Positions 510 through 64,000 of a stretch of 64,000 bases of DNA are shown in pieces. Made by a program: the position numbers and the translations under genes. The notes beneath the pieces are model-generated. The model searched no databases and was not told where the DNA came from. It saw only the letters and a program-made list of their open reading frames with translations. The DNA is from Isurus oxyrinchus (Eukaryota). Within the stretch, counting starts at the first letter, position 1; the number at the start of each line of letters is the position of its first letter. The stretch is taken from the NCBI GenBank assembly GCA_026770705.1, contig JANJGN010000052.1:3596001-3660000 (forward strand), given 5' to 3'.

Positions 510-626
510 GGCTCCTTGCTGCAGCGCCAGAAGAGAATGGGCAGACAGCAGCTCTGCAGATTCTGCTGTAACTGCTGTAATTGGAGAGAACCAAATGAGA
601 CTTGTGGTCTCTGCTGTAGATATTAG
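510..626 (+). CDS. HAMP: Hepcidin, terminal coding exon (end of propeptide + mature peptide); upstream exons lie outside the window
   Basis: Acceptor cttttccag at 501-509, then phase-0 frame GSLLQRQKR|MGRQQLCRFCCNCCNWREPNETCGLCCRY* (TAG 624-626). Furin site RQKR followed by the 8-Cys hepcidin pattern C-x2-CC-x-CC-xn-C-x2-CC. Confidence 0.9.
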   Translation, partial: GSLLQRQKRMGRQQLCRFCCNCCNWREPNETCGLCCRY

Positions 627-924
627 ACCCTGGCCTCATTCACGCAAGGTCATCCTGCACCATGCCACAGCCTCTCCCCTCCTTATCTACTGCTTAGCAA
701 TCTATTTCACACAGGCCCTGTTCATTAATTCCAGCTGAAACTTTACCTGCGTTTTACAGCAGGGAAAGAAGCCATTTGGCCCATCTGCTCCATGCTGGTG
801 TTTCTGCTCCACACGAGTCTCCGCCCACCCCTTCTCCATCTCACCCCATCACCATATCCTTCTATTCATTTCTCCCTCGTGTGTTTATCCAGCTTCCCCT
901 TAAATACATCGACACTATTCACCT

Positions 925-1073
925 CACGTGACTGTGTTTGTGTCTGTCTTTATGAGCGTGTGTGTGTGACTGTCAATATGTGTGTGTTAATGTGAATGTG
1001 TGTGATTGTGTCAGCGTGTGTGTGTGTATGTGTGACTGTCAGTGCGTGTCAATGTGAATGTGTGTGATTGTGT

Positions 1074-1111
<38 letters not shown>

Positions 1112-1262
1112 CTGTGTCAGTGTGTGTCAATGTGAATGAGTGAGTGTGTCAGTGTGTCTGTGTGGGTGTGTGTGACTGTGTCAGTGTGTGTCAATGTGAA
1201 TGAGTGAGTGTGTCAGTGTGTCTGTGTGGGTGTGGTTGTGTGAGTGTGCAAGTGAATGTGTG
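925..1262. repeat. Degenerate (TG)n microsatellite
   Basis: TG-rich low-complexity tract. Confidence 0.9.
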
Positions 1263-3099
1263 AGGAATCTTATGACTAAGTCATTTGAATGGATGTTACT
1301 GGGGTTAATGATAGTTAAAATTCAGAGAGATGTAAAGCGGGCTCCTGATTTTGCTGCTTTATGCTCCCGGGCACAGATTGACCCCGACAATGTGTTCATG
1401 ATTCACCATCATCTTGTCGGGACTTTAATTGTAAAGATTATGATTTGTGAAAAAAAATGAATAAACAACTTTTGTCTTCACAAAGTGTCTGGCTTGGTAT
1501 TTCAGGCTACTTGTCTCTCCCTCACCCTCCCCCCCCACCATGCCCCCCACACCAGGGAACAATTGTCCCCCCTTCCTCTGAAGTTCTGGGTAAAGATCAG
1601 CTTTATTCAATGCAAGCTGTTCCGACATCGAGAACGTTGTTACAAATATCTCACAAAGGGCACACGCCATGATAGCCCACTTTCAACAGATTTTACCAGT
1701 TGACCAGGTTGAAAACCTTTTCATAAACCACAACGTAGGTGTTCAATTCTTGCTGCTGTTTGCTTAATGTTCTCATAACTGCTATAACCTCTCTAGTTCC
1801 ACTACATAACAACACCAACATAAATAAACAGAAGCAGGAGTAGGCCTTTTGGCCTCCCAAGCCAGCTTGTCCATTTAATTTGAACCTGGCTCCTGCTGAA
1901 AGTTATTTAAGTTGAAGCGATAAAGCCATCAGGTGCAGGGATTAAAATGTAAGCAAAGGAAAAATAATACTTAGACATGAGATTTAAAATCAGTTTCTGT
2001 GAAGAATCATACTGAGGCCATTGCACTGGATTCCTTCTTTCCAGAGTGAAGGGTTTAAAACTAGGAGTCACATTCAGCAGCTGCGTTGTCTTCTCTAGTT
2101 GACTATTTGGAGGTTGCCTATAGATGTGAATCAGCAGGTCAGCAGCTTTGGGGAGTGAGTGAAGGTCCCTTTTATTTACAGGATCTGCCACAGGGTGTGC
2201 AGGAATATTCCTGCTGAATTCTCCATCCTTGCATTCATGAAGGGTTTGAAACTGGAAGTCATATTCAGCAGCTGCAATGGCCTCTGTAGCCAACTGTCTG
2301 GAGGTTGCCTGTACATGTGGACTCAGCAGGTCAACAGCTTTGTAGGGTGGGGGGGGGTGCACGGGTAGTAAAGGTCCCTTTACTTTAAAGGCTCTGCCAG
2401 TGCAACACTTGATGATCCTGGGTCAAAATCATGTATCACCCTCCCCAACAGCACTGTGGATGTGCCCTATGGAGGTTCCTTGGCTTCGACAAGCAGCCTA
2501 CCAGCTCTGCTCTCAATTCCTCTTCGCACTTGCTTCCTTCCTCCTCTGGTCTTTACTTTGTTATAGTGTTAGTGTCCGCTCTGCCTTTTTTGTAGCTTTC
2601 CCAATTCTTCCCACCAACTCTCTCTGGCTTGATCCTTCTCTGTGCTCATCTCATTGGTTTGGGTTTCTATCCGTTCATTGACCTGGTGTAATCTGAAACT
2701 GGTGCAATCAGGTAGGGGTGGGGGGGTTGGCGCTGGCCGTGGGTGGTGATACACGGCTACCTTTTTACCAAAATTGTTTCACGGGATGTGGACAGCGTTT
2801 GTTACCTGTTCCTGACTGACCCCTTGAGAAGGGGGTGCTGAGCTGCCTTTTCGAAGTGCTGCAGTTCACCTGGTTTGACTGGTCTGTGGCGGGTTTTGAT
2901 ATAACTCAGTGGCTTGCTCGGCCATTTCAGGGGCCAGTTAAGAGTCAACCACATTGCTGTGGGTCAGGAGTCACACGTAGGCCAGAATGGGTAAGGACGG
3001 CAGGTTTCCTTCCCCAAAGGGCATTAGTGACCCAGATGGGTTTTTGCAACAATTGGCCTTAGTTTCATGGTCACCATTACTGAGACTAGCTTCGCATTC

Positions 3100-7338: not shown

Positions 7339-8068
7339 AAAGAACATTGTACAAATTGCACAAAATTTCATCTGATGCCTGTGTCTCATGCTAACATGAA
7401 GTTCATGCACACAACAGGAATATTTCTCGCTGTTTCTCTGCAGCAAGACAGCTTTGGTATCACACCACCCACTGGCAAGAGTGTGCAGTTACAATGTGAC
7501 ATGTTTACATTGGAAATTTCTATTATAAAGATGGACAGAGGAATTCATCTGATTGGAAAACGTGACAACAGGAAGCTATGTCTTTGAGCCAAGTATTTTG
7601 CAGCAAAACAAGAATTTTAATCTTTAAATATCTACAGAACAGGCTGAGCATTTTAATCACTTGAGTTAATCAATGTAATTTTATTCATAAGCCAAATGCT
7701 TCTTACAATCTATCGCAGCATGAAAAAGGTGCAGCATTCAGAAAGCACATTCCAATCAGAGAACAGAGTTTAGCAACGTCACATTTCTGTTCATTCCTAT
7801 TCGATGAACAATTTCAAAAGGAAATTGGACGGAAATTGGAAATAAATTTGCAGGGATACGGGGATAGAGCAGGGGATGGGACTGAGTGGATTGCTTTACA
7901 GAGAGACAGCATAGACTCAATGGGCCAAATGTCCTCCTCCATTGCTGGAATGACTCGATGATACGGAGACGATTATAACCAGGACACTGACCAGTTTCAT
8001 TACAACTTAACACAACATCACACGTTATTTGTCCGCACTGACTGACCAGATTGTTGCTGTACAAAGCT

Positions 8069-8208
8069 TCAAACAGTCTGTCGACTTCCTTTCACTGTTT
8101 GTCTCTCCCAGACACAGACTCCAGCGATAGTGATAACCACAGCCACAAGGAATATCACAGCTCGTATTCCCAGGATCAGGATCACGTGCAGAATCTCTCC
8201 TCCACTGT
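8069..8208 (-). CDS. Siglec gene C terminal exon: transmembrane segment with Arg + short cytoplasmic tail (activating type)
   Basis: Minus-strand acceptor tttctttctgtgtgttctctag, phase-1 start compatible with the upstream Ig exons. Encodes (D)SGGEILHVILILGIRAVIFLVAVVITIAGVCVWERQTVKGSRQTV*; Arg codon at 8164-8162; no Tyr motif. Confidence 0.8.
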
Positions 8209-9322: not shown

Positions 9323-9474
9323 GTTCCACAGTGATGGTTATGAACCCCTCCACTGCTCCATGTTCATTCTCTGAGCACACTGATAGTCTCCAGTGTCCCT
9401 GGATGTAACGTGAGGAATCACCAACCACAGCTCATTGTTGGAACTTGTTCTGTTCATTGTGATATTCAGATGTC
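9323..9474 (-). pseudogene. Degenerate 3' half of a C2-set repeat exon in gene C
   Basis: Homologous to the 282-nt exons of gene A (MNRTSSNNELWLVIPHVTSRDTGDYQC) but 5'-truncated, with a 1-nt deletion after the Cys codon; donor GTTAGT retained. Confidence 0.8.
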
Positions 9475-9796
9475 AGGACCGGACTCAACAAGACAGATTG
9501 CAGGTTTACCAACAGAAAGTGAACAACAATTTATATTTAAAGGGAAGAGAGTGCTGGTTAATCAGCAAGTGGTCTCTGATTGGAGGAGGTGTTGCCATGG
9601 AAAATAATGTGTGTGAGATGTAAAGTTTAGACAGCTTGTCTCTTCATTCAGCAACAATCAAATAAAGATCAGTTAACTTCTATCGACTGTGAAGCACTTT
9701 GAGAGGCAGAGAATGTGGACACTGAGAACGGGCTGCACTGTCAGAGGGTCAGCGCTGAGGGAGTGCTGATGTAGAATGAAGGGTGTCTGTACTTAC

Positions 9797-10093
9797 CTTG
9801 CACAGTTAGTACGAGGGTCCGCTCCGATGCAACAGATGGATATCTCACTCTGCAGCTGAGAGTGTGTCCGTGGTGTTTGAGTGATGGGATCAGGGTCAGA
9901 ACAGAAGTATAGGTCAGAGTGACACCATGCTGAGTTACAGTGTTTGAGACTGATCCAGGTACGTCAGTGGGAGTGTCCCAGGTTAAGACAGGTGCTGCTG
10001 TTCCATTGCACGTTGTGTTGAAGGTGCAGCTTACATCCACAGGCTTTCCTGCAATAATTTCAGCAGGGAATATCGTGGGTTTATCTGTGAAAT
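9797..10093 (-). CDS. Siglec gene C domain-2 C2-set exon
   Basis: 297 nt, AG/GT, phase 1-1; DFTDKPTIFPAEIIAGKPVDVSCTFNTTCNG...HHGHTLSCRVRY..TVQ, nearly identical to the gene A and B exons. Confidence 0.9.
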
Positions 10094-10821: not shown

Positions 10822-11187
10822 CAGAAACGTGAACCTGGGTTACAGGGTAATAGTTATGGCTCGGACCATTGTCAAATTCTATTCTGAAAAAATAAGGTCC
10901 CGCATCTTCCCGTCTGATGTTGTTTATAATCAGGGAACAGTCGCCATCTTTCAGGTCTCCAGACAGCCGGGTCCGATGGTGGAACCGTGGTAACTCGTGA
11001 CTGTGATCCTTGGAGTGAAAGGCTATAGACGATGTTCTCCATTCCTCATTATTAAACCAGACTCCACCTCGCGGTTGGTTTTCCAGACACGATGGATAAC
11101 TGTAATGACATGGAATCTGTACACAGGAACATTCCTGCACTGTCACCTCTCGTGGATTGTCACCTTTCCACTCTTGCGAGGGTTCAG
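10822..11187 (-). CDS. Siglec gene C proximal V-set exon
   Basis: 366 nt, AG/GT, phase 1-1; SCVQIPC, DCSL and EDAGPYFFRIE with the essential Arg. Confidence 0.9.
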
Positions 11188-11239
11188 CTGGGGAGAGAAA
11201 TCTCAATATTTAACTCTGAATGGTTTGTGGATCCACTGA

Positions 11240-12917: not shown

Positions 12918-13283
12918 CAGAAACATGAAGCTGGGTTTCAGGACGGTCGTTGTATCTATTCCTGCTGTCAAAATCTGTTCTGAATAAATAATATCCTGCA
13001 TCTTCCCGTCTGATGTTGTTTATAATCAGGGAACAGTCACCATCTTTCAGGTCTCCAGAAAGCCGGGTCCGATGGTGGAACCGTGGTAACTCGCGACTGT
13101 GATCCTTGGAGTGAAAGGCTATAGACCATGTTTCCCAATTCCTTCTCATATACCAGATTCCAACAGGTGATCTCGGTACTAAATATGATGGGTAGCTGTA
13201 ATGACACGGAATCTGTACACACGAACCTTCCTGCGCTGTCACCTCTCGTGGAGTGTCACCTTTCCACACTTGTGGTAGTCCAG
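12918..13283 (-). CDS. Siglec gene C distal V-set exon
   Basis: 366 nt, AG/GT, phase 1-1, open frame; EDAGYYLFRTD with Arg retained; loops diverged from the other V exons. Confidence 0.85.
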
Positions 13284-17200: not shown

Positions 17201-17449
17201 GGTAAACAGAACGTGCTGATTTCTGAGCCCCGGAACACAACCAGAGACACAACTAGTGAGGGGGAGACCCCAGCTCCCCGGGGTCTCTCTGAAGGTGCAT
17301 TGGGAGGCGATGCTGGACATTGGCACATCGACAATCCCGACGGCCTTCTCTACGCCAATCCCGAAGTATTGAGGATGTCCAGTGATGATGGGTCTGTCCA
17401 CAGGGAAGAGGAGACGGAATACGCACAGATCAGGTTCGAGCATAACTGA
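17201..17449 (+). pseudogene. Orphan Siglec terminal cytoplasmic exon (LLYANP + TEYAQI)
   Basis: Paralogue of exon 42235-42483 with intact acceptor and open frame; no plus-strand TM or Ig exons upstream in the window. Confidence 0.75.
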
Positions 17450-18618: not shown

Positions 18619-18700
18619 GAGAAAGACAGCGATGGAGGAGAGAGTTTCAGGGACCAGTGACATTGCATTGACCCCCAGTCCACTCTCTGTGAAGCACCAG
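18619..18700 (+). pseudogene. Orphan Siglec first cytoplasmic exon
   Basis: 82 nt AG/GT exon RKTAMEERVSGTSDIALTPSPLSVKHQ, paralogue of 40601-40682; no TM exon upstream. Confidence 0.75.
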
Positions 18701-18835
18701 GTACAGGAGCTGTTTACACTCACTCCAAAGCTTCACTCTCAGTGTGTAGACAACACATGTCCCAGATTCCCAGCCCAGTTACCCACTGATTTGTACCTGT
18801 GGAGTCAGCAATGGTTCAATATCATGCTGTCTCTC

Positions 18836-19592
18836 TGTTATGACACAGAAACTGGTAAAGGCTGTTGTTTAAAATCCCAGAGGGAAACTTTAAACAACTG
18901 TCATAACCTATATTTCCCAGTGGAATGTTTGAGATGCATCTCTAAATTCAGGAATAAGACCACCAGTTCTTGAGATGGGTTTATATCAAACTACATGAGA
19001 CATTTATTAATTTTCACAAGTTAATCATATGCACATTGGTACAAGCTAGTACTATCATAACTTTTTAACAAATTCCCAAACTAAAGTCCTCTAAGACAAC
19101 CCATAGACTTTAAGCAGATTCCAAGCGAAGCATTTTCACCTCACAAATTCCAAATGAGGTTCCTTTCACTTTGGTTCCTTTGCAGACAGGTGCAGGCTTA
19201 CAGCTGCTTTGATGTTACAAGCCTCTGCTCTGCACACACAAAACTGCTCAAGTTATACCCAGCTCTTCTCTTTGAATGTAAATTCTCATTGTATCATCAG
19301 GACCTTTGATCTCCATCTCTTCTAACTATAATTCCCGTTTCATAGTATCAATTTTATTAGTAATATAAACATTGATTGGTTTAAGAATTCACTCCCAGGC
19401 TTTGAATCCTCCTTTTAAAAATGCAATATGCCTCTTTACCTCTTTGTTTACATCTCAAAACTACTATACATCAAAGTACCCAGACCGGCTGGCTTTAATC
19501 CAATTAAAACACACACACACACACCCACAGACTAAACCTCTGTTTAAAAAGACAATTTCCAATTACAATACATACATTAATAGATTCATAAC
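18836..19592 (-). mobile_element. Solo-LTR-like element (inverted)
   Basis: Similar to 23212-24038 and to the reverse complement of the 13.7 and 42.8 kb elements. Confidence 0.55.
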
Positions 19593-19721
19593 GCTCAGTC
19601 TCTGACCCTTCATCTCTCTCTCTCTCTCTCATCCTCTCTCTGATTACAAGATTCATGTTATTGAGCCTCACACCAGGCACCTGAGTGCAGAATCCAAGCC
19701 GACATTCGCCAGAGCCATTAC

Positions 19722-20005
19722 CGAGGGAGTGCGAGACTGACAGAGGGTCAGTACTGAGGGAGTGCTGCACTGTCAGAGGGTCAGTACTGAGGGAGTGCTG
19801 CACTGTCAGAGGGTCAGTACTGAGGAAGACCTGTACTGTCGGAGGGTCAGTACTGAGGGAGCGCTGCACTGCTGGAGGGTCAGTACTGAGGGAGCGCTGC
19901 ACTGTCGGAGGGTCAGTACTGAGGGAGTGCTGCACTGTTGGATGGTCAGCATTGAGGAAGTGCTGCACTATCGAAGGGTCAGTACTGAGGGAGCACTGCA
20001 CTGCC
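19722..20005 (+). repeat. 33-bp minisatellite array
   Basis: Tandem units preceding the terminal exon, as in gene A. Confidence 0.9.
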
Positions 20006-20148
20006 ATAGGTGTTTTCTTTCATAAGACATGTGAGAGAGGGTTAAACCCACTGACCCACGACTGACACTAACGAGGCTGCAGAATATTTTAACCCTATCA
20101 GTGCCAGTAAATGATGTGAGGATGCCTTCTGTTTCCATTTCTCTGTAG

Positions 20149-20397
20149 GGTAAACAGAACGTGCTGATTACTGAGCCCCGGAACACAACCAGAGACACAA
20201 CTAGCGAGGGGGAGACCCCAGCTCCCCGGGGTGTCTCTGAATGTGCAGTGGGAGGCGATGCTGGACATGGGAACCCTGACAATCCCGACGAGCTTCTCTA
20301 CGCCAATCCCCAAGTCTTCAGGGTGCCCAGTGGTGATGGGTCTGTCCACAGGGAAGAGCAGACGGAATACACCCAGATCAGATTCAAGAGAAACTGA
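20149..20397 (+). pseudogene. Second orphan Siglec terminal cytoplasmic exon (LLYANP + TEYTQI)
   Basis: Open frame GKQNVLITEPR...TEYTQIRFKRN*, in frame with exon 18619-18700. Confidence 0.75.
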
Positions 20398-25129: not shown

Positions 25130-25169
25130 ATGATTCGGAAATCTTACTTCCTCCTGTCACTTCTCCAAG
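25130..25169 (+). CDS. Gene A leader exon (signal peptide)
   Basis: Exon starts at 25088; accATG MIRKSYFLLSLLQ, phase-1 donor G|GTAATA; joins to VGLS|QEW. Confidence 0.85.
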
Positions 25170-53863: not shown

Positions 53864-53903
53864 ATGATCAGGAAATCTTACTTCCTCCTGTCACTTCTCC
53901 AAG
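53864..53903 (+). CDS. Siglec gene B leader exon
   Basis: Exon starts at 53824; ATG MIRKSYFLLSLLQ G|GTAATA; upstream non-coding exon donor at 53430/53431. Confidence 0.85.
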
Positions 53904-55079
53904 GTAATATCATCATCAGATTTAATGTTAATAGTCTCTGTAAAGGATCATTCTTATTGAGCTGTGATTGGGAACCGATTCAGCAGTGACCCTGTGCACA
54001 AACTCAGACCAAGTCCCATTCACCCATCACCCCTGTGCTCACTGATATACACTGACTCCCTGTCTGACAGCAGAATTGGAGGTGATCAGAGATCTCAGAG
54101 AGTTGTAGGGACTGGAGGATGTTACAAAGTTCAGCAGAATTGTAGCAGCGAGAGCAGGATCTTAAAATTCAGGTGCTATCGGACGTTGGTCAGTGAGCGA
54201 TGGGGAGTGATGGGTTGAGTAGAGAAGCAAAGATAAAAACTGGGGGATGAAGTCTATCCTGCTGCGAGGTCTCCGATAGCAATGGCCTGAAATTTGTGTC
54301 CTTTGCTGCCTTTATTCAAAATTTCCCATGAAGACAACACAGCAGCTCCTAGAATAGACAGGCTGTTCAGTGTCACACTTCCTGTCCATTCTCACCTTGC
54401 TAGATACTTCAATAAGGGAGCAAGATAACTGAAAGAGAGAAGGAAGGTAAAGCTGTCTGTGTGTAAAACTGTCAAATATTCTGAGTTATCCTGATTGATT
54501 CTGATCTGCTGCATAGTTTAAATTTCACAGAATCTGGGCACTTTGCAGCTCAGAGAGAGACCATTGACTCACTGCCTGAAAGGGCGGTGGAAGCAGATTC
54601 AACAGGAACTTTCAGAAGGGGAACTGGATAAATACTTGAAGGGAAATTTGCAGGGATGTGTGAAAGGTGCTGGAGAGGAATTGGGAAAGAGCCAGCACAT
54701 GCACGATGGGTCAAATGAGCTCCTCCTGTGTTGTATCATTCAACAATCAGACAATTTAAGACCCTTGTCAGCAAAACTTCAGAATCCTGCTGAATCACAG
54801 ATGTTTCAGAAGGACAGGGAACAAGAAGTTTCTGGTAGCAGCGTTTCATGTGGGGCCCAGTTCAGTTTGAACAAATAAACAACACCATCTTTGAAAGTCA
54901 TGAACCCACCACAGCGGCACCTCCGACACATGCAGAGCTCAGGCTAGAGGCGCTTTGTTAGTGTGTTTCACAGTGTCTGCTGGAGTAGGGTCAGTGCTGA
55001 GCTTGGGGACAAGTCAGTCTACAATGCTGCATCGGAATCAACAATACAACAATATGGGGTTTGGATCAGAAATAATCCA

Positions 55080-55240
55080 TTAGACAATGAGGATCCAAAG
55101 AGATTCCTTAGACAATGAGGATCCAAAGAGATTTCTTAGACAATGAGGATCCAAAGAGATTCCTCAGACAATGAGGATCCAAAGAGATTCCTTAGACAAT
55201 GAGGGTCCAAAGTGATTCCTTAGACAATGAAGATACAAAG
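55080..55240 (+). repeat. 28-bp VNTR
   Basis: About 5.7 copies of tagacaatgaggatccaaagagattcct. Confidence 0.9.
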
Positions 55241-55992
55241 TGCACCAATCAGATTGAACCAGATTAGCTAATCAGCTGTGTTGAAGAGCAAACAGGAATG
55301 TTAGGCTAATTAGTGATTCATGACGGTGATAATGGGGGGAGTTCTGAGGGCTCCTAATCCATTGTCCTGTCTTGTAAATCAGCACTGAATGGATCTCAAT
55401 GGGTGGGTCTCGTAGACACTGTGTTGGGTGGAAGACTGGCTTCACTAAGGGGAAGCGGCAGTAGAGAGGCATTGTCACTGGGCTAGTATTCCAGAGGCCC
55501 AGGGTGATGCTCTGGGGCCCTGGGTGTAAATCCCATCACAGCAGATGAATGGGATTAAAAAGCCTGGTTCACTGATCCCCTTCAGGGAAGGAAATCTCCA
55601 CCCTTACCGAGTCTGGCCTACATGTCACTCCAAACCCACAGCAATACAATTGATTCTTAAATGCCTCTGATGGACATGGGATGGGTAATAAATGCTGGGC
55701 ACATCCCATGAACGGATAATTTGAAAAACACATGACTTGGAGACACTGTGTTGGGTGGAAGACTGGCTTCACTAAACAGGGTCCTGAGGACCATGAGCCA
55801 ATGTAGAATGAACTTGTCCACTCCTGTGTCCAGGATTCTCTTCCATCCATTGTGAAACCTTGGGGAGATCCCTGTGTGTCCTGTAGATGGTCCACACTGC
55901 AGCCACTGTGCCCCAGTGATGGACGGGGTGGATATCGAGTCTAGTGGATCTACAAACCATCCAGAGTTAAATATTGATATTTCTCTCCCCAG

Positions 55993-56361
55993 TTGGACTG
56001 TCACAAGAGTGGAAAGGTGACACTCCACGAGAGGTGACAGCGCAGGAAGATTCGTGTGTACAGATTCCATGTCATTACAGTTATCCATCACATTTGGAAA
56101 GCCAACCACGAGTCGGAGTCTGGTTTAATAATGAGAATCAGATTCCTGGATCTCCCATTGCCTTTCACTCCAAGGATCACAGTCACGAGTTACCACGGTT
56201 CCACCATCGGACCCGGCTGTCTGGAGACCTGAAAGATGGCGACTGTTCCCTGATTATAAACAACATCAGACGGGAAGATGCAGGACCTTATTTTTTCAGG
56301 AAAGAATTTGACAGCAGTAATAGTTACAACTACTATCCTGTAACCCAGCTTCACGTTTCTG
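55993..56361 (+). CDS. Gene B V-set exon
   Basis: 369 nt, phase 1-1; EDAGPYFFRKE with Arg retained; distinct CC' loop NNENQIPGSPI. Confidence 0.92.
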
Positions 56362-56761
56362 GTAAGTGCTGTGTTATAATTACTCAACAATTCACATTCA
56401 ACACTCAATGGGAATTAACACAAACTGTGACGTTTACATATTAACACAAAACACAGCTTATTATAACACACTGTCTGATTCTCAATAACCTGCTGATAGC
56501 TTCCAGTTCAGTCCTAAAGCAACCTCTAATACTCACTTTAATATCAATGATTAAATGTATTGACTGTGTCCATCAAAGTTATCAGGTTATCCACTCCCAT
56601 CGATCTCTCTAATCCTGTTTAAAATAATTTCCTGATCATTGTAACCTCTCAGTTCTGATATCATCCTTGCAAAGGTGCTTTCTCTTGTGGGACTGTGATT
56701 TCTATTTGAACTGATGCTTCACGTTATATTTCTCTAAAAGGATCCATTCTCTGTCTGTTAG

Positions 56762-57058
56762 ATTTCACAGATAAACCCACAATATTCCCTGCTGAAATTA
56801 TTGCAGGAAAGCCTGTGGATGTAAGCTGCACCTTCAACACAACGTGCAATGGAACAGCAGCACCTGTCTTAACCTGGGACACTCCCACTGACGTACCTGG
56901 ATCAGTCTCAAACACTGTAACTCAGCATGGTGTCACTCTGACCTATACTTCTGTTCTGACCCTGATCCCATCACTCAAACACCACGGACACACTCTCAGC
57001 TGCAGAGTGAGATATCCATCTGTTTCATCGGAGCGGACCCTCGTACTAACTGTACAAG
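56762..57058 (+). CDS. Gene B domain-2 C2-set exon
   Basis: 297 nt, AG/GT, phase 1-1. Confidence 0.92.
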
Positions 57059-57271
57059 GTAAGTATGGACATCCTTCATTATACATTCGCTGGAACAGTC
57101 TATATTGTGCACAGCAGGATCTCATAGAAAGGTATTCTGATGAGAACCAGATCATCTGTAGTTTAGGGAAAAACACTAACCAGAAAACAGTTAATGACAG
57201 TTTCTGAACATTAACACTGGAGCTTTTTTTTCCAGCCAAGAAGCTGATAGAGCAGAGCATCATTCACAATA

Positions 57272-58460
57272 TACTAACCCCCTGACAGTGCAGCACTCCC
57301 TCAGTACTGACCGCCTGACAGTGCAGCACTCCCTCAGTACTGACCGCCTGACAGTGCAGCACTCCCTCAGTACTGACCCTCTGACAGTGCAGCACTCCCT
57401 CAGTACTGACCCTCGGACAATGCAGCTCTCCCTCAATACTGACCCTCTGACAGTGCAGCACTCCCTCAGTACTGACCCCCTGACAGTGCAGCACTCCCTC
57501 AGTACTGACCGCCTGACAGTGCAGCACTCCCTCAGTACTGACCGCCTGACAGTGCAGCACTCCCTCAGTACTGATCCTCCAACAGTGCAGCAATCCCTCA
57601 GTACTGACCCTCCAACAGTGCAGAACTCCCTCAGCACTGACCCTCTGACAGTGTAGCGCTCCCTCAGTACTGACCCTCTGACAGTGCAGCACTCCCTCAG
57701 TACTGACCTGCTGAAATTGCAGCTCTCCCTCAGTACTGACCCTCTGACATTGCAGCACTCCCTCAGTACTGACCCTCTGACAGTGCAGCACTGCCTCAGT
57801 ACTGACCCTCCAATAATGAAACAATCCCTCAGTACTGACTCTCCGACAGTGCAGCACTCCTTCACTGCTGACCCTCCAACTCTGCAGTGCTCCGTCAGGA
57901 CTGAAAATCTAACATTTCATATCTCCCTCCTGACTGACCATCTGAAAATACAACAGATCCTCGGTCGAGTCCTTCAAACAGTGCTGCACTTCCACAGTAC
58001 AGAATCTCCCCCCCACCCACAGTGCAGCACTTCCACAGTACTGAACCTCTGACAGTGCAGCACTCCCTCAGTACTGACCCTCCCACCTGCAGCACTCCCT
58101 CAGTACTGACCCTCCCACATGCAGCATTCCCTCAGTACTGACCCTCCCACATGCAGCACTCACTCAGTACTGACCCTCCCACAGTGCAGCACTCTCTCAG
58201 TACTGACCCTCCCACATGCAGCACTCACTCAGTACTGACCCTCCCACAGTGCAGCACTCCCTCAGTACTGACCCTCCCACATGCAGCACTCCCTCAGTAC
58301 TCACCCTCCCACAGTGCAGCACTCCCTCAGTACTGACCCTCCCACATGCAGCACTCCCTCAGTACTGACCCTCCCACAGTGCAGCACTCCCTCAGTACTG
58401 ACCCTCCCACATGCAGCACTCCCTCAGTACTGACCCTTTGACAGTGCTGCACTACCTCAC
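57272..58460 (-). repeat. 33-bp minisatellite array (31/33-bp variants distally)
   Basis: Tandem cagtgcagcactccctcagtactgaccctctga units. Confidence 0.95.
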
Positions 58461-58689
58461 TATTGGCTTTAAACTAAATAGAGTGTGGGGCGAATGTTTC
58501 TGGAGAGGGTATATGTACAGTTACAAACCAAAAGGATTTATTAGCATTGCAGGATAGCTGTTTTGGCAATGATACCCAGTGTGTGACAGGAAGGGACACA
58601 GTGTCCAAACATAAAAATACATCAGCAAATAGTGTCAGAGGGGGGGAAATGATAAAAAGACAAAATTAATGGCTCTTTACTTAAATGCA

Positions 58690-59350
58690 CATAGTATTTG
58701 GAATGTTGGCCTTTATTTCAAAGGGAATGGAGTATAAAAATAGGGAAGTCTTGCTAAAACTATACAAGGCACTAGTTAGACCACACCTAGAATACTGTGA
58801 GCAGTTTTGGTTCCCTTATCTAAGGAAAGATGTACTGGCATTGGAGGCAGTCCCGAGAAGGTTCACTAGGTTGATCCCAGTAATGAGGGATTTTCATATG
58901 AGGAGAGGTTGAGTAGGATGGGCCTGTACTCATTGGAGTTTAGGAGAATGAGAGCTGACCTTATTGAAACATATAAGATTCTTAGGGTGCTTGACAGGGT
59001 AGATGCTGAGAGGTTGTTTCCCCTTGTGGGAGAGTCTAGGACCAGAGGGCATGATCTCAGAGTAAGGGGTCACCCATTTAAGACAGAGATGAGGAGTTTC
59101 TTCTCTCAGAGGGTAGTGAATGTGTGGAATTATTTACTGCAGAGAGCTGCAGAGGCTGGGTCATTAATTATATTCAAGGCTGAGATACACAGTTTTTTAA
59201 TCAGTCAGGGAATCAAAGGCTATGGGGAAGAGGCAGGAAAGTGGAGTTGAGGATTGTCAGATCAGCCATGGTGTCATTGAATGGCGGAGCAGAGTTGATT
59301 GGCCGAATTGCCTCCTTCTGCTCTGACGTCTTGTGGTCTTATGGTCTTAT
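58690..59350 (+). mobile_element. CR1-type LINE 3' fragment
   Basis: LYKALVRPHLEYC, LEFRRMRADLIETYKI, ESRTRGHDL. Confidence 0.9.
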
Positions 59351-59351
59351 C

Positions 59352-62118
59352 ACCCTCCAACAGTGCAGAGCTCCCTAATTACTGATCCTCCGACAATGCA
59401 GCACTCCCTCAGTACTGAACCTCTGACAGTGCAGAGCTCCCTAATTACTGACCCTCCGACAATGCAGCACTCTTCCAGTGCTGACCCTCCGACAGTGCAG
59501 CATTCCCTAAGTACTGATCCTCCAACAGTGCAGCACTGCCTCAATACTGACCCTCCAACAGTGCAGCACTGCCTCAATACTGACCCTCCAACAGTGCAGC
59601 ACTCCCTCAGTGCTGACCCTCCGACAGTGCAGCACTCCCTCAGTACTGACCCTCCGATAGTGCAGCACTCCCTCACTACTGACCCTCCGTCAGAGCAGAG
59701 CTCCTAATTACTGACCCTCCAACAGTGCAGCACTCCCTCAGTACTGACCCTCCAACAGTGCAGAACTCCCTAATTACTGACCCTCTGATAGTGCAGAGCT
59801 CCCTCAGTACTGACCCTCCAACAGTGCAGCACTCCCTCAGTACTGACCCTCCAACAGTGCAGAGCTCCCTAATTACTGACCCACCGACAGTGCAGCACTC
59901 CCTCAGTACTGACCCTCTGACAGTGCAGCACTCCCTCAATACTGACCCTCCAACAGTGCAGCACTCCCTCAGTGCTGACCCTCCAACAGTGCAGAGCTCC
60001 CTAATTACTGACCCACCGACAGTGCAGCACTCCCTCAGTACTGACCCTCTGACAGTGCAGCACTCCCTCAATACTGACCCTCCAACAGTGCAGCACTCCC
60101 TCAGTACTGACCTTCCGACAGTGCAGCAGTCCCTCACTACTGACCCTCTGACCGTGCAGCACTCCCTAAATACTGACACTCTGACAGTGCAGCACTCCCT
60201 CAGTACTGACCCTCCGACAGTGCAGTACTCTTTCAGTTCTGACCATCCAACAGTGCAGAGCTCCCTAATTACTGACCCTCCGACAGTGCAGCACTCCCTC
60301 AGTACTGACCCTCTGACAGTGCAGCACTCCCTCAGTACTGACCCTCCCACAGTGCAGCACTCCCTCAGTACTGACCCTCCAACAGTGCAGAGCTCCCTAA
60401 TTACTGACCCTCCGACAGTGCAGCACCCTCTCAGTACTGACCCTCCGACAGTGCAGCACACCCTCAGTACTGAACCTCCGACAGTGCAGAGCTCACTAAA
60501 TACTGACCCTCCCACAGTGCAACACTCCCTCAGTACTGATCCTCCGACAGTGCAACACTCCCTCAGTACTGTTCCACCGACACTGCAGCACTCCCTCAGT
60601 ACTGATCCTCCGACAGTTCAACACTCCCTCAGTACTGTCCCACCGACAGTGCAGCTCTCCCTCAATACTGACCCTCCGACAGTGCACCACTCCATCAGTA
60701 CTGAACCTTCAACAGTGCAGCACTCCCTCAGTACTGATCCTCCAACAGTGCAGCACTCCATCAGTACTGATTCTCCGACAGTGAAGTACTCGCTCAGTAC
60801 TGACTATGTGGCAGTGAAGCTTTTACAGTACCCACCCACCATCAGTACAGCAGGTCCTCAGTACTCACGCTCCAACAGGGCAGCACTCCCTCACTACTGA
60901 CCCTCCGTCAGAGCAGAGCTCCTAATTACTGACCCTCCAACAGTGCAGCACTCCCTCAGTACTGACCCTCCAACAGTGCAGAACTCCCTAATTACTGACC
61001 CTCCAAAAGTGCAGCCCTCCCTCAGTACTGACCCTCCAACAGTGCAGCACTCACTCAGTACTGACCCTCTGACAGTGCAGAGCTCCCTCAGTACTGACCC
61101 TCCAACAGTGCAGCACTCCCTCACTACTGACCCTCTGACCGTGCAGCACTCCCTAAATACTGACACTCTGACAGTGCAGCACTCCCTCAGTATTGACCCT
61201 CCGACAGTGCAGAGCTCCCAAATTACTGACCCTCCGACAGTGCAGTACTCTTTCAGTTCTGACCCTCCGACAGTGCAACAATACCTCAGTTCTGACCATC
61301 CAACAGTGCAGAGCTCCCTAATTACTGACCCTCCAACAGTGCAGAGCTCCCTAATTACTGACCCTCCGACAGTGCAGCACTCCCTCAGTACTGACCCTCC
61401 GACAGTGCAGCACTCCCTCAGTACTGACCCTCCGACAGTGCAGTACTCCCTCAGTACTGACCCTCCAACAGTGCAGAGCTCCCTAATTACAGACCCTCCG
61501 ACAGTGCAGCACCCTCTCAGTACTGACCCTCCGACAGTGCAGCACACCCTCAGTACTGATCCTCCGACAGTGCAACACTCCCTCAGTACTGTCCCACCGA
61601 CAGTGCAGCACTCCCTCAGTACTGATCCTCCGACAGTGCAACACTCCCTCAGTACTGTCCCACCGACAGTGCAGCTCTCCCTCAATACTGACCCTCCGAC
61701 AGTGCAGCACTCCATCAGTACTGAACCTTCAACAGTGCAGCCCTCCCTCAGTACTGATCCTCCAATAGTGCAACACTCCCTCAGTACTGTCCCACCGACA
61801 GTGCAGCTCTCCCTCAATACTGACCCTCCGACAGTGCAGCACTCCATCAGTACTGAACCTTCAACAGTGCAGCACTCCCTCAGTACTGATCCTCCAACAG
61901 TGCACCACTCCCTCAGTCCTGATCCTCCAACAGTGCAGCACTCCATCAGTACTGATTCTCCGACAGTGAAGTACTCGCTCAGTACTGACTATGCGGCAGT
62001 GAAGCTTTCACAGTACCCACCCACCATCAGTACAGCAGGTCCTCAGTACTCACCCTCCAACAGGGCAGCACTCCCTCAGTACTGACCCTCCAACAGTGCA
62101 GCACTCCCTCAGTACTGA
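59352..62118 (-). repeat. Large 33-bp minisatellite array with ~1.2-kb higher-order duplication
   Basis: About 80 units; diagnostic variant blocks recur at ~59682/60901 and ~60802/61987. Confidence 0.95.
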
Positions 62119-62222
62119 ACTGAAGAGTCTGCCTGAATGATGTGCTTTGTGGTGAAGGATTGATATTACACCTTTAACATTGTCAGGGTCTCTGAAAGTA
62201 ACTGATCTTTATTTGTTTTTAG

Positions 62223-62504
62223 ATGCACCACAGAATCTCTCAATTACTTTTCATGATATGATTAACGCTTCATCGATCAATATAATTGAGGGGAATTCTG
62301 CAGAGATAATCTGCTCTGTCGAGAGCTTCCCAGCTTCTAACCTGACGTGGCGACATCTTAATGTCCCAATGAACAGAACAAGTTCCAACAATGAGCTGTG
62401 GTTGGTGATTCCTCACGTTACATCCAGGGACACTGGAGACTATCAGTGTGTGGCAGAGAATGAACATGGAGCAGTGGAGGGGTTCATAACCATCACTGTG
62501 GAAC
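62223..62504 (+). CDS. Gene B C2-set repeat exon 1
   Basis: 282 nt, AG/GT, phase 1-1. Confidence 0.9.
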
Positions 62505-63169
62505 GTGAGTTAACACAAATTGCAATAACACTGTCACATACAGACGCACACACACACACATAGACATACACATGCACACACACTCACTCATGAACAGATG
62601 TATACAAACAGGCACACNNNNNNNNNNNNNNNNNNNNNNNNNNNNNNNNNNNNNNNNNNNNNNNNNNNNNNNNNNNNNNNNNNNNNNNNNNNNNNNNNNN
62701 NNNNNNNNNNNNNNNNNNNNNNNNNNNNNNNNNNNNNNNNNNNNNNNNTCCTCTCTCAGTGCTGCACTGGAGTCTCGGTATCAGCCCTGATTCTGTGTTG
62801 AAGGAAGGTAAACTCCAGATCAACAAGACCCTGAATTGGATGAGCAAGCTCCTGAACAGTGAATTTTATATTTACCCCTCAGTGCTCCATCAATCAAATA
62901 CAATTCATTGCCTGTCAAGCCCTTGGCGAATTCCTGAAGATGTGAATGGAACTTTCTTTCATTCTAGATTGACAGCACCTCAACTGGTGGGAGAATGCAA
63001 CTGCAGTGTGACAGTTTACATAGGCAGTGTCCATTATAAATGTGACAGAGGAACTTATTCTGAGGAAAGGTGCCTGGAAATGCATTCAGACATCAGATTC
63101 AAAGAGATGATACATGGAGTCTTGCTGTGCACTGCGCTTGCTCACTCTAAAATCTTTATATGTTTATAG

Positions 63170-63451
63170 ACGCACCACAGAATCTCTCAATTACTTCTCT
63201 AGATATGATTAACACTTCATCAATCAATATAATTGAGGGGAATTCTGCAGTGATAATCTGCTCTGTTGAGAGCTTCCCAGCTTCTAACCTGACGTGGCGA
63301 CATCTTAATGTCCCAATGAACAGAACAAGTTCCAACAATGAGCTGTGGTTGGTGATTACTCACGTTACATCCAGGGACACTGGAGAATATCAGTGTGTGG
63401 CAGAGAATGAACATGGAGCAGTGGAGGGGTTCATAACCATCACTGTGGAAC
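63170..63451 (+). CDS. Gene B C2-set repeat exon 2 (gene presumably continues beyond the window)
   Basis: 282 nt, AG/GT, phase 1-1. Confidence 0.9.
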
Positions 63452-63489
63452 GTGAGTTACACAGAATTGAACGTTCTCGTGTTATTAGC

Positions 63490-64000
63490 TCATGGGATGT
63501 GGGCATTGTTGACAAGACCAGAAATCATTGCCCATCTGTAACTGCCCCTTGAGAAGGTGGTGGTGAGCTGCCTTCTTTAACCACTGCAGTCCATGTGGTG
63601 AAGGCACACCCACAGTGCTGTTAGGGAGGGAGTTCCAGGATTTTGACCCAGCGACGGTGAAGGAACGGCCGATATAGTTCCAAGTCCCAGGGCAGACCAC
63701 CACCTCAAGTTCGCCTCCAAGTCAAAGCCCTCACTGACTTGGAACTGTCTTGGTGGAAGAGGTTAAGTGTTTGGAAGGTGCTGTCGAAGGAGCCTTGGTG
63801 AGTTGCTGCAGCGCATCTTGTAGATGGTGCACACACTGCTGCCATTGTGTGCCAGTGGTGGAGGGTATGAATGTTTATGCTGGTGGATTGGCTGTCGATC
63901 AAACAAACAGCTCCTGGATGGTGTCGAGGTTCTTGAGTGTTGTTGGAGCTGCACTTATCCAGCCAAGTGGAGATTATTCCATCACACTCCTGACTTGTGC
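63490..64000 (-). mobile_element. CR1-type LINE 3' end (rearranged)
   Basis: RSFTVAGSKSWNSLPNS tail, same family as the 18.0-18.5 kb copy. Confidence 0.8.

What the first reader, a model, noticed from the sequence alone, without database searches (positions are those of the whole stretch)
510..64000. CD33-related-like Siglec cluster directly beside hepcidin, at the MAG/CD22 syntenic position
Seen: a hepcidin exon about 7.5 kb from the first Siglec exon; at least three Siglec genes with the essential Arg and the Siglec Cys pattern; gene A has a tail (ELFYANINF...TEYAQI) laid out like CD33 (ELHYASLNF...TEYSEV). Known: in human the order is USF2-HAMP-MAG-CD22 on 19q13, and CD33-related Siglecs are mostly characterised in mammals. 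Inference: an expanded, rapidly evolving immune Siglec cluster at the ancestral HAMP-MAG-CD22 locus, informative about the origin of CD33-related Siglecs.
Basis: partly seen in the sequence, partly recalled or inferred. Interest (0 to 1): 0.78.

Follow-up and report, generated by a model that had tools for sequence, protein, structure and literature searches.

The report
Shark Siglec receptor array beside hepcidin
This stretch of a shark genome holds several sialic-acid-receptor (Siglec) immune genes, one of a "hold back" type and one of a "switch on" type, next to a hepcidin gene copy; they form a shark-and-ray branch of the family whose link to mammalian CD33-type Siglecs or MAG could not be settled.

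Summary
The last exon of a hepcidin-family gene lies at 510-626 (+). The first Siglec exon lies 7.4 kb away.

The window then carries:
- one complete ITIM-bearing Siglec gene (A, 25.1-42.5 kb; V, C2 and seven tandem C2 exons);
- the 5' part of a second gene (B, from 53.9 kb);
- a minus-strand gene (C, 13.3-8.1 kb; V-V-C2, then a transmembrane exon with an arginine);
- orphan tail exons.

All five N gaps lie in introns or between genes.

The closest relatives are shark and ray proteins that databases name inconsistently (Siglec-5/8/10/12/13, MAG-like, CD22-like). In my trees they form their own well-supported clade. It lies outside tetrapod MAG, the CD22 lineage and tetrapod CD33-related Siglecs. 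The best tree puts it weakly on the CD33-related side, but topology tests reject neither that nor a MAG or CD22 placement.

The CD33-like tail also occurs in frog and crocodile MAG, so it does not discriminate. Whole-exon dN/dS is below 1. I could not read the flanks.

The scan has noted hepcidin-Siglec blocks before on other DNA of this genome. Hepcidin is therefore probably not a unique positional marker here. First reading: partly supported.

The parts
510..626 (+). Last exon of a hepcidin-family gene (cleavage site, 8-Cys peptide with a long loop, stop at 624-626). Exons 1-2 lie left of the window.
   Evidence: frame and acceptor; Pfam Hepcidin E 2e-7; four extra loop residues against the solved bass hepcidin.
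8069..8208 (-). Gene C, last exon: transmembrane helix with an Arg, 14-residue tail and stop (activating-type anchor).
   Evidence: matches the C-termini of P0021, P0006, P0141; acceptor; RNA-like contigs join 8208 to 9797 with canonical minus-strand intron ends.
9324..9605 (-). Gene C: decayed copy of the repeated C2 exon (frameshifts and stops), skipped in the contigs of runs X1-X3.
   Evidence: three frames needed; joint 8208>9797 skips it; in X4 a joint 8208>9323 includes a 94%-alike copy; an extra A behind 9375 in X1, X2, X4.
9797..10093 (-). Gene C: first C2-set exon.
   Evidence: joints 8208>9797 and 10093>10822.
10822..11187 (-). Gene C: second V-set exon (V2), Arg and Cys kept.
   Evidence: joint 10093>10822.
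12918..13283 (-). Gene C: first V-set exon (V1), in phase with V2, 79% identical to gene A's V. No leader exon upstream in the window.
   Evidence: Two-V proteins occur in Mustelus (P0003, P0005). One search shows a V1-type exon joined to a V exon and to a leader in contigs, probably of paralogues; 0 leader matches on the minus strand.
17201..17449 (+). Orphan cytoplasmic tail exon (open frame; the proximal Tyr motif has Pro at +3).
18619..20397 (+). Orphan pair: first cytoplasmic exon (about 18619-18700) and tail exon (about 20149-20397), with no V, C2 or transmembrane exon upstream on this strand.
   Evidence: the tail is 88% identical to that of P0018.
25130..25169 (+). Gene A: leader exon (ATG, signal peptide, phase 1 donor).
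28656..29021 (+). Gene A: V-set exon with the conserved Arg and three Cys.
29881..30177 (+). Gene A: first C2-set exon (C-x5-C).
30397..30489 (+). Gene A: 93-nt in-frame remnant of a repeated C2 exon (189 nt deleted inside). Use in mRNA unknown.
31162..37863 (+). Gene A: seven intact 282-nt phase-1/phase-1 C2 exons in about 1-kb units (31162-31443, 32115-32396, 33143-33424, 34192-34473, 35270-35551, 36529-36810, 37582-37863).
   Evidence: exons differ at 4-16 of 282 nt; the 300 nt upstream of successive gene A copies are 67-84% alike.
38925..38990 (+). Gene A: 3' remnant of a further C2 exon, without an acceptor.
39809..39905 (+). Gene A: transmembrane exon (no charged residue in the helix).
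40601..40682 (+). Gene A: first cytoplasmic exon.
42235..42483 (+). Gene A: tail exon with a proximal ITIM-type and a distal ITIM-like tyrosine motif, then the stop.
53864..64000 (+). Gene B, 5' part: leader 53864-53903, V 55993-56361, first C2 56762-57058, repeated C2 exons 62223-62504 and 63170-63451. It runs off the window.

Best explanation
The window is part of a shark genome, most like the lamniform sharks Carcharodon and Cetorhinus. It holds a piece of a tandemly amplified array of Siglec-family immune-receptor genes that lies next to a hepcidin-family gene copy.

Shown:
- Gene A encodes a leader, a sialic-acid-type V domain, a C2 domain, seven near-identical C2 domains, a plain transmembrane helix and a tail with an ITIM-type and an ITIM-like tyrosine motif.
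- Gene C encodes two V domains, one C2 domain and a transmembrane helix with an arginine and almost no tail.
- Gene B starts like A.
- The family is a clade of its own among sharks and rays, distinct from tetrapod MAG, the CD22 lineage and tetrapod CD33-related Siglecs.

Inferred from established knowledge of mammalian Siglecs (recalled, not tested here):
- The V domain binds sialylated glycans through the conserved Arg.
- Gene A type receptors damp cell activation by recruiting SHP phosphatases to the phosphorylated tyrosine motifs.
- Gene C type receptors pair through the membrane Arg with an ITAM adaptor of the DAP12 kind and activate.
- Together they would make a paired inhibitory/activating system.

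The array grew by unequal crossing-over of about 1-kb exon units and of whole genes, with later homogenisation of the C2 parts. Which tetrapod lineage it is orthologous to (CD33-related, MAG or both) is unresolved.
For: Exon map, splice sites and phases.

Siglec hallmarks:
- Pfam V-set E 9.6e-14 and Ig_CD22 E 9.9e-12.
- Arg and Cys align with solved Siglec-5 and CD33. C-x5-C aligns with MAG domain 2.
- Arg is kept in 4 of 4 window V exons and 41 of 43 cluster V rows. The three Cys are kept in 43 of 43.

Relatives: 10 of the 10 best-ranked representatives that I looked up are elasmobranch proteins. All 33 of 33 hits to the membrane-proximal part of P0011 are from sharks.

The Arg-bearing transmembrane exon is conserved in Chiloscyllium P0021 and in P0006 and P0141.

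Splicing V2>C2>Arg-transmembrane exon, with canonical intron ends, is seen in contigs of 3 runs of one sample. Exon bins are far deeper than intron bins.

Trees: cluster clade 100/99; window V exons sit in an 11-row set with Carcharodon and Cetorhinus (SH-aLRT 96).

The repeat copies are distinct, not identical. Synonymous divergence of V exons is 0.21-0.30 against 0.01-0.04 for the neighbouring C2 exons (Fisher p 0.004 to 0.00007).
Against: - No binding, signalling or cell-type data exist. Function rests on analogy.
- Gene C has no leader exon in the window. The laid contigs carry fixed differences from the window (for example 10042 in all four runs), so the transcripts may come from paralogues at least 95% alike rather than from this copy.
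- All runs are contigs whose RNA nature is a guess. Runs X1-X3 are one sample.
- How many of gene A's C2 exons enter the mRNA is unknown. Its expression was not tested.
- One gap (37874-38379) lies inside the repeat array.
Confidence: 0.8

Rival explanations
1. The shark and ray clade is the counterpart (co-orthologue) of tetrapod CD33-related Siglecs. On this view a CD33-type lineage with paired inhibitory and activating members already existed in the jawed-vertebrate ancestor, at the hepcidin-linked locus.
For: - The best trees hold a branch with MAG, CD22 and bony-fish proteins on one side and tetrapod CD33-related Siglecs plus the shark clade on the other (92/84; SH-aLRT 85, bootstrap 53).
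- The cluster member P0011 scores slightly higher against Siglec-8 domains 1-3 (122.9 bits) than against MAG domains 1-3 (109.7).
- The tail layout is shared, and the best non-elasmobranch tail matches are mammalian CD33-related proteins (41.4 and 37.1 bits).
- There is an Arg-bearing activating partner, as in mammalian paired Siglecs.
- Elasmobranchs have a separate CD22 lineage.
Against: - Support is below the tool's star level and there is no outgroup. With a root on the long CD33-related stem the two are not sisters.
- The AU test does not reject the MAG or CD22 unions.
- The tail layout also occurs in frog and crocodile MAG.
- In mammals (recalled) CD33-related genes lie far from HAMP, MAG and CD22.
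Confidence: 0.3
2. The clade is an elasmobranch expansion of the MAG orthologue itself. The gene that sits next to hepcidin was multiplied and kept, or took on, immune-type signalling, while tetrapod MAG specialised for myelin.
For:
- P0011 scores 231 bits against the whole mouse MAG ectodomain, its best solved match.
- Frog and crocodile MAG tails keep both tyrosine motifs, with close wording.
- No elasmobranch protein fell into the tetrapod MAG clade: 0 of the 56 elasmobranch rows of the 92-row tree. No elasmobranch row is named plain MAG.
- The AU test allows cluster plus MAG (delta lnL 2.9, p 0.455).
- The nearest language-model clusters are MAG and MAG-like (0.98).
Against: - The ML trees do not join them.
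- MAG scores highest partly because its solved chain is the longest. Over comparable domains Siglec-8 is level with it or higher.
- Genes A and C do not have the five-domain MAG layout.
- A true shark MAG may simply have been missed by word-limited searches that list at most 120 rows.
Confidence: 0.3
3. The genes are CD22 orthologues or co-orthologues: long stalks of many Ig domains with inhibitory tails.
For: - Gene A has at least nine Ig domains and an inhibitory tail.
- Pfam Ig_CD22 matches the V exon, though this model seems to cover Siglec V domains in general.
- Several relatives are auto-named CD22-like.
- The AU test does not formally reject the union (p 0.253).
Against: - Solved CD22 is the weakest Siglec match of the V exon (26.8 bits against 49-60 for the others).
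- Chimpanzee CD22 groups with a different elasmobranch lineage (P0052, P0082, P0370, P0367 and others; 98/74 and 98/88). Those proteins have CD22-type tails with more tyrosine motifs.
- Delta lnL is 12.5, the worst of the three unions.
- The long stalk of gene A is a recent tandem copy of one exon.
Confidence: 0.04
4. Much of what is seen is assembly artefact or dead debris: repeated exons from mis-assembly of a repeat-rich region, and gene pieces that are not functional.
For: - There are five gaps, 33-bp satellite arrays and microsatellites in the introns.
- Orphan tail exons, a decayed C2 exon, a 93-nt remnant and a gene without a leader are present.
- The best DNA runs hold only 0.39 of the sampled words of 8000-13400.
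Against: - The seven C2 exons differ at 4-16 of 282 nt and all keep an open frame and consensus splice sites.
- Relatives in other sharks also have variable numbers of this domain (P0011 two, P0021 four).
- Genes A and B have complete, in-phase exon sets.
- Spliced contigs match the predicted joins.
Confidence: 0.06

Closest known systems
Mammalian CD33-related Siglecs, including the paired receptors Siglec-5/14 and Siglec-11/16
   Same: - V-set domain with the conserved Arg and the Siglec Cys pattern.
- V then C2 order.
- A tail with a proximal ITIM-type and a distal ITIM-like tyrosine motif.
- A partner gene with a positively charged residue in the membrane helix.
- Clustered, multi-copy genes with pseudogene debris.
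   Different: - A separate clade with 100/99 support.
- It lies beside a hepcidin-family gene.
- The stalk is built from up to seven copies of one C2 exon.
- Tandem V-V forms exist.
- In the paralogue pairs compared here the C2 exon, not the V exon, is the homogenised part.
MAG (Siglec-4) of tetrapods
   Same: - It neighbours hepcidin (order recalled, as in the finding).
- It is the best whole-ectodomain match among solved structures.
- Frog and crocodile MAG keep both tail tyrosine motifs.
   Different: - MAG is single-copy, has five Ig domains and sits on a long, uniform branch (100/100).
- No shark sequence joined it.
- The window genes have 3 or at least 9 Ig domains and an activating partner.
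CD22 (Siglec-2)
   Same: Many Ig domains and an inhibitory tail. It shares a sequence record with the cluster in 5 other elasmobranch species, judged by equal record length.
   Different: The V domain is far less alike. A distinct elasmobranch CD22 lineage exists, with a two-module ectodomain and a multi-tyrosine tail.
RefSeq models of elasmobranch 'Siglec-5/8/10/12/13', 'MAG-like', 'CD22-like', 'sialoadhesin-like' and 'hemicentin-like' proteins
   Same: The same family. Window exons are 84-98% identical to Carcharodon and Cetorhinus models.
   Different: These are automatic names with no consistent orthology. I found no paper that describes the family.

Membership tests
Siglec family (sialic-acid-binding Ig-type lectins) | N-terminal V-set Ig domain followed by C2-set domains | tested here: met
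   Pfam V-set E 9.6e-14, Ig_CD22 E 9.9e-12, C2-set_2 E 1.7e-8. The top solved matches are Siglec-5, CD33, Siglec-8, MAG and sialoadhesin.
Siglec family (sialic-acid-binding Ig-type lectins) | Conserved Arg on the F strand that contacts the sialic-acid carboxylate | tested here: met
   It aligns with the Arg of solved Siglec-5 and CD33. It is present in 4 of 4 window V exons and 41 of 43 cluster rows. Its role is inferred.
Siglec family (sialic-acid-binding Ig-type lectins) | Three-Cys pattern in V plus an extra Cys in the first C2 domain | tested here: met
   The Cys columns are kept in 4 of 4 window V exons and 43 of 43 cluster rows. C-x5-C aligns with MAG domain 2. Disulfide connectivity itself cannot be tested here.
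Siglec family (sialic-acid-binding Ig-type lectins) | Binding of sialylated glycans | not testable with these tools
   Needs a recombinant protein and glycan arrays.
CD33-related Siglecs | Groups with CD33-related Siglecs to the exclusion of MAG, CD22 and others | tested here: inconclusive
   The clan is present in the best trees at 92/84 and 85/53. The tree is unrooted. The AU test keeps the MAG union (p 0.455) and the CD22 union (p 0.253).
CD33-related Siglecs | Tail with a membrane-proximal ITIM and a distal ITIM-like motif | tested here: met
   Gene A tail, 42235-42483. The feature is not exclusive: frog and crocodile MAG have it too.
CD33-related Siglecs | Position in the CD33-related gene cluster region of tetrapods | not tested
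The only non-Siglec neighbour seen is hepcidin, which in human (recalled) marks the MAG/CD22 region instead.
MAG (Siglec-4) | Groups with tetrapod MAG | tested here: inconclusive
   Not joined in the ML trees. The constrained tree is only 2.9 lnL worse, p-AU 0.455.
MAG (Siglec-4) | Five Ig domains, single conserved gene | tested here: not met
   Gene A has V plus 8 full C2 exons. Gene C has V-V-C2. There are several paralogues in 64 kb.
CD22 (Siglec-2) | Groups with CD22; CD22-type multi-tyrosine tail | tested here: not met
   Chimpanzee CD22 joins other elasmobranch proteins (98/74). CD22 is the weakest V match (26.8 bits). Gene A's tail has two tyrosine motifs only. Caveat: the AU test does not formally reject the union (p 0.253).
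Hepcidin family | Eight-Cys mature peptide after a dibasic cleavage site, encoded by the last exon | tested here: met
   Pfam PF06446, 31.6 bits against a cut-off of 27. Aligned to bass hepcidin with a four-residue longer loop.
Hepcidin family | N-terminal segment needed for ferroportin binding (iron-hormone type) | not tested
   No full-length reference was in hand. Earlier notes of the scan call such copies atypical. I only confirmed the longer loop.

The most novel reading that the evidence does not exclude
An immune-type Siglec with an ITIM plus ITIM-like tail and an activating, charged-membrane partner already sat beside hepcidin in the ancestor of jawed vertebrates. Tetrapod MAG and the CD33-related Siglecs both descend from it. 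Sharks kept it in place and amplified it, together with hepcidin copies, into a large array. MAG would then be a neural derivative of an immune receptor, and the paired-receptor design would be older than 400 million years rather than a mammalian invention.
Probability: 0.3. Interest if true: 0.75.

Novelty: new variant of a known kind. Interest (0 to 1): 0.55.

Why it matters
A review cites Bornhofft et al. 2018 for the view that Siglec-1, CD22, MAG and Siglec-15 are the ancient Siglecs, while CD33-related ones differ markedly between species (passage read in PMC9630641).

A large shark and ray clade of Siglecs with inhibitory tails and Arg-bearing activating partners, next to hepcidin, bears on this in two ways:
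- It shows that multi-copy, paired immune Siglecs are not confined to tetrapods.
- It gives a concrete data set for asking where CD33-related Siglecs and MAG came from.

It also offers natural variants for studying how stalk length and V-domain number tune sialic-acid sensing: V-V heads and stalks of one to seven copies of one domain.

Tried and rejected

Fetching reference Siglecs:
- A search seeded with a mammalian protein listed only CD33-related rows (120 of 512).
- A search with the membrane-proximal part of P0011 reached sharks only (33 of 33).
- The third search did bring tetrapod MAG and chimpanzee MAG-CD22 read-through models.
- Siglec-1 and Siglec-15 were never obtained, so the trees have no outgroup.

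The Atlas search gave MAG, sialoadhesin-like, Siglec-10, Siglec-5 and CD22 clusters, all at 0.97-0.98. This does not discriminate.

treekit's AU test did not finish in three calls. I replaced it with IQ-TREE under LG+F+G4 on 54 of the 92 rows. One search failed on the thread count and timed out. finished, but the CD22 constraint tree came from a fast search only.

Rows left out of the 92-row tree:
- P0015, P0035, P0143, P0002, P0098 and P0054 (many-copy or long-branch rows);
- every V followed directly by another V;
- all unlabelled representatives.

Other dead ends:
- A fuzzy-regex search for a leader exon timed out. It was replaced by blastn-short and the DNA search.
- One search failed on a wrong frame and was corrected.
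- Bornhofft et al. 2018 is not held.
- Cao et al. 2009 appeared only among the cited references of the papers that one search listed.

Positive selection on the V exon was considered and is not supported at whole-exon level. I ran no site-wise test.

No structure prediction was run, because the sequence alignments to solved Siglecs already place the Arg and the Cys.

Supplements are closed. Supplementary file 9 of the whale-shark genome paper (PMC8455134) may list Siglec families and could bear on the claim that the family is undescribed.

Window genes entered searches and the V tree as single exons. The two-domain tree used database proteins of related sharks as stand-ins.

Full report
**What is in the window.** The sequence is vertebrate, with CA microsatellites and a 33-bp satellite that read as long false ORFs.

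At 510-623 (+) an exon follows an AG acceptor. It encodes a dibasic cleavage site and an eight-cysteine peptide, with a stop at 624-626. Pfam Hepcidin matches above its cut-off (E 2e-7, 31.6 bits against 27). Against the solved bass hepcidin the loop is four residues longer. Only this last exon is in the window.

**Gaps, tested first.** One search shows the letters beside each N run. With the exon map every gap falls outside coding sequence:
- 20589-20772 lies about 190 nt after an orphan tail's stop.
- 37874-38379 begins 10 nt into the intron after exon 37582-37863.
- 46178-46396 and 50163-50325 lie in intergenic microsatellite.
- 62618-62748 lies in the intron after 62223-62504.

No frame crosses a gap. 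Gap lengths are estimates, so the gap at 37874 could hide more copies of the repeated exon. I filled no N.

**Exon map.** tblastn with gene A's exons and with two shark proteins, together with the splice contexts, gives the following.

*Gene A (+):*
- leader 25130-25169
- V 28656-29021
- first C2 29881-30177
- a 93-nt in-frame remnant 30397-30489
- seven 282-nt phase-1/phase-1 C2 exons between 31162 and 37863
- a 3' remnant 38925-38990
- transmembrane exon 39809-39905
- cytoplasmic exon 40601-40682
- tail exon 42235-42483

*Gene B (+):*
- leader 53864-53903
- V 55993-56361
- C2 56762-57058
- repeated C2 exons 62223-62504 and 63170-63451
- then the window ends

*Gene C (-):*
- V1 12918-13283
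- V2 10822-11187
- C2 9797-10093
- a decayed C2 copy at about 9324-9605 that needs three frames
- a last exon 8069-8208 that encodes a membrane helix with an arginine and a 14-residue tail

*Orphan exons on the + strand:* a tail at about 17201-17449, and a cytoplasmic exon plus tail at about 18619-20397, with no V, C2 or transmembrane exon before them.

The leader exon occurs twice only, in genes A and B. There is none on the minus strand. As assembled, gene C therefore lacks a start.

I searched every window gene exon by exon. I built no joined model.

**Are they Siglecs?**
- Gene A's V exon matches Pfam V-set (E 9.6e-14) and Ig_CD22 (E 9.9e-12).
- Among solved structures it matches Siglec-5 (60.4 bits), CD33 (57.3), Siglec-8 (55.5), MAG (55.3), sialoadhesin (54.5), Siglec-10 (52.1), Siglec-7 (49.3), Siglec-15 (36.4) and CD22 (26.8).
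- In those alignments the Arg and the Cys residues line up.
- The first C2 exon aligns with MAG domain 2, including the C-x5-C pair.
- In a 132-row alignment of V domains the Arg is kept in 4 of 4 window exons and in 41 of 43 rows of the shark and ray cluster. The three Cys are kept in 43 of 43.

**Who are the relatives?**
- An exhaustive HMMER search with the V exon found 1499 representatives at E 0.001 or better, and 35 at 1e-30 or better.
- I looked up thirty of them by name.
  - The ten I picked from among the top 24 ranks are all from sharks or rays (Scyliorhinus, Mustelus, Chiloscyllium, Stegostoma, Hypanus, Mobula, Pristis). Their automatic names range from Siglec-8, -10, -12 and -13 to MAG-like and hemicentin-like.
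  - Lower ranks hold bony-fish, frog, turtle and mammalian proteins.
- Window exons are 84-98% identical to Carcharodon and Cetorhinus models.
- In the V tree the four window V exons sit in an 11-row set with these two genera (SH-aLRT 96). The source is therefore most likely a lamniform shark.
- The Arg-bearing last exon recurs in Chiloscyllium P0021 and in P0006 and P0141. Two-V proteins recur in Mustelus P0003 and P0005.
- A third tail type, rich in YxN motifs, is seen in other members.

**Transcripts.**
- One run search listed 23 runs from 12 studies. None held half of the sampled words.
- I laid four contig sets on 8000-13400. X1-X3 are one sample of coded organism A. X4 is from organism B. 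The tool's 'RNA' label is a guess.
- X1-X3 show joints 8208>9797 and 10093>10822, both with canonical intron ends for the minus strand. This is V2 to C2 to the Arg-bearing exon, skipping the decayed C2 copy.
- Exon bins are tens of times deeper than intron bins.
- X4 shows 8208>9323 in a record with 16 mismatches, probably a relative's copy that keeps the C2 exon.
- Three further observations point to paralogues that are at least 95% alike:
  - an extra A behind 9375 in X1, X2 and X4;
  - a fixed difference at 10042 in all four runs;
  - a contig that joins a V1-type exon to a V exon with gene-A-like first letters, and another that joins a leader to a V1-type exon.
- The design is therefore transcribed and spliced as predicted. 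I cannot say that this copy is the source.

**Phylogeny.** The third protein search supplied tetrapod MAG (frogs, crocodile, snakes, birds, mammals), chimpanzee MAG-CD22 read-through models and elasmobranch 'CD22-like' proteins. One search supplied mammalian CD33-related proteins. Searches supplied frog, turtle and bony-fish rows.

The careful tree used V plus the following C2 domain (92 rows, 235 columns; omitted rows are listed under Tried and rejected). It gives:
- tetrapod CD33-related Siglecs, 28 rows, 100/100;
- the shark and ray cluster, 31 rows, 100/99, joined weakly by two Heptranchias proteins (91/65, 89/82);
- tetrapod MAG, 8 rows, 100/100;
- chimpanzee CD22 with module 1 of the elasmobranch CD22-like proteins (98/74) and their module 2 next to it (98/88);
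- one central branch (92/84) with MAG, CD22 and bony-fish rows on one side and CD33-related plus the shark cluster on the other.

There is no outgroup, so this branch does not show sisterhood.

On 54 of the 92 rows under LG+F+G4:
- the free tree equals the constrained 'cluster plus CD33-related' tree;
- 'cluster plus MAG' is 2.9 lnL worse (p-AU 0.455);
- 'cluster plus CD22 group' is 12.5 lnL worse (p-AU 0.253; fast search only).

Nothing is rejected.

Bit scores against solved structures tell the same story:
- For P0011, a cluster member: whole MAG 231, Siglec-8 domains 1-3 122.9, MAG domains 1-3 109.7, CD22 69.7.
- For the CD22-like P0052: CD22 115 and MAG domains 1-3 104.

**The tail.** The C-termini printed show the same two-motif layout in mammalian, frog and turtle CD33-related proteins. 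They show it also in Pelobates, Bombina and Crocodylus MAG.

A short-query BLAST of the last 45 residues against all 410 proteins in hand ranks mammalian CD33-related tails (41.4 and 37.1 bits) just above crocodile and frog MAG (33.3, 31.6, 31.2). The layout is thus probably ancestral and does not mark CD33-relatedness.

**Rates and mosaic history.**
- Pairwise NG86 values for the V exons are dN/dS 0.24-0.63, with dS 0.21-0.30.
- For the neighbouring first C2 exons of the same genes dS is 0.013-0.039.
- The synonymous difference is significant in all three pairs (Fisher p 0.004, 0.0002, 0.00007).
- Either the C2 parts are being homogenised or the V exons are older and were shuffled.
- By eye,'s output, the amino-acid differences between V exons gather in three short stretches. 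I ran no test of this.
- 'Rapidly evolving' is therefore not shown at whole-exon level.
- The seven C2 exons of gene A differ at 4-16 of 282 nt. The 300 nt upstream of successive copies within gene A are 67-84% alike. They are distinct copies, not one copy assembled several times.

**Synteny.** The window shows hepcidin (+) followed by gene C (-, tail to tail), the orphans, then genes A and B (+). No USF2, LSR, FFAR, MAG-type or CD22-type gene is in the window.

The only outside evidence I could get is indirect. In Scyliorhinus canicula, S. torazame, Mustelus asterias, Chiloscyllium punctatum and Pristis pectinata, cluster members and a tree-verified CD22-lineage protein carry the same longest-record length. 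That suggests one chromosome or scaffold. It does not show adjacency.

Earlier notes of this scan (unchecked AI notes) report hepcidin-Siglec blocks 0.75, 1.5 and 2.3 Mb before this window and on several other pieces. They also report that such hepcidin copies are long-loop variants. If that holds, hepcidin is co-amplified with the Siglecs and is not a unique landmark. I confirmed only the long loop of this copy.

**Literature.** Seven searches found no paper on shark or ray Siglecs or on a hepcidin-Siglec link (listings and abstract starts only).
- In PMC9630641 I read the passages that state Siglec-1, -2, -4 and -15 are the ancient members.
- In PMC8455134 I read the one passage that lists Siglecs among gene families gained in jawed vertebrates.
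- Bornhofft 2018 and Cao 2009 are not held.
- The library lacks most subscription journals, and supplements are closed.

This is a real, expanded Siglec array beside a hepcidin copy, and its genes are not plain MAG or CD22 orthologues. The label 'CD33-related-like', the claim of rapid evolution and the claim about the ancestral position remain open.

The most likely working model is a paired inhibitory/activating sialic-acid sensing system of a shark-and-ray-specific Siglec lineage. The mechanism is inferred from mammalian Siglecs.

Noticed in passing
window 6555-7337, 16565-16943, 40896-42044, 57272-58459, 59352-62118: Arrays of a 33-bp satellite (11 to 84 copies) lie in Siglec introns and between genes. 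They read as long false ORFs on both strands.
   Followed up: partly
window 3400-5100 and 43450-44400: Fragments of reverse-transcriptase (LINE-type) ORFs. Pfam RVT_1 scores E 3.8e-8 and 1.9e-5; the second is below the curated cut-off.
   Followed up: partly
window V exons (28656-29021, 55993-56361, 10822-11187) against first C2 exons (29881-30177, 56762-57058, 9797-10093): Between the same gene pairs the V exons are 5-15 times more diverged at synonymous sites than the C2 exons next to them. This suggests gene conversion of the C2 part or shuffling of V exons.
   Followed up: partly
window 9375 and 10042: The laid contigs carry an extra A behind 9375 (3 of 4 runs), which would remove one frameshift of the decayed C2 exon. 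They also carry a fixed G>C at 10042 (4 of 4 runs). This is a paralogue, an allele or an assembly slip.
   Followed up: no
window 17201-17449 and 20149-20397: The orphan tail exons have Pro at +3 of the proximal tyrosine motif, so no ITIM consensus. The same variant tail ends the database proteins P0018 and P0310, so it is a conserved tail subtype and not mere decay.
   Followed up: partly
proteins P0052, P0082, P0370, P0367, P0090 (other elasmobranchs): Elasmobranch 'CD22-like' models carry two V-C2 modules about 300 residues apart. Module 1 groups with chimpanzee CD22 and module 2 forms a sister clade. This is either real two-headed receptors or fused gene models.
   Followed up: partly
proteins P0366, P0373, P0374, P0379, P0380 (chimpanzee): Models named CD22 isoforms of about 1290-1440 residues start with a MAG V domain and hold the CD22 V domain at about residue 646. 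They are MAG-CD22 read-through models and reflect the adjacency of the two genes.
   Followed up: no
proteins P0385, P0389, P0387 (frog and crocodile MAG): Non-mammalian MAG tails keep a proximal YxNI-type motif and the distal tyrosine motif. In the mammalian MAG rows the proximal one is altered.
   Followed up: partly
window 39900-39910: The donor of gene A's transmembrane exon overlaps an in-frame stop. An unspliced read-through would end the protein right after the membrane helix, giving a tail-less form.
   Followed up: no
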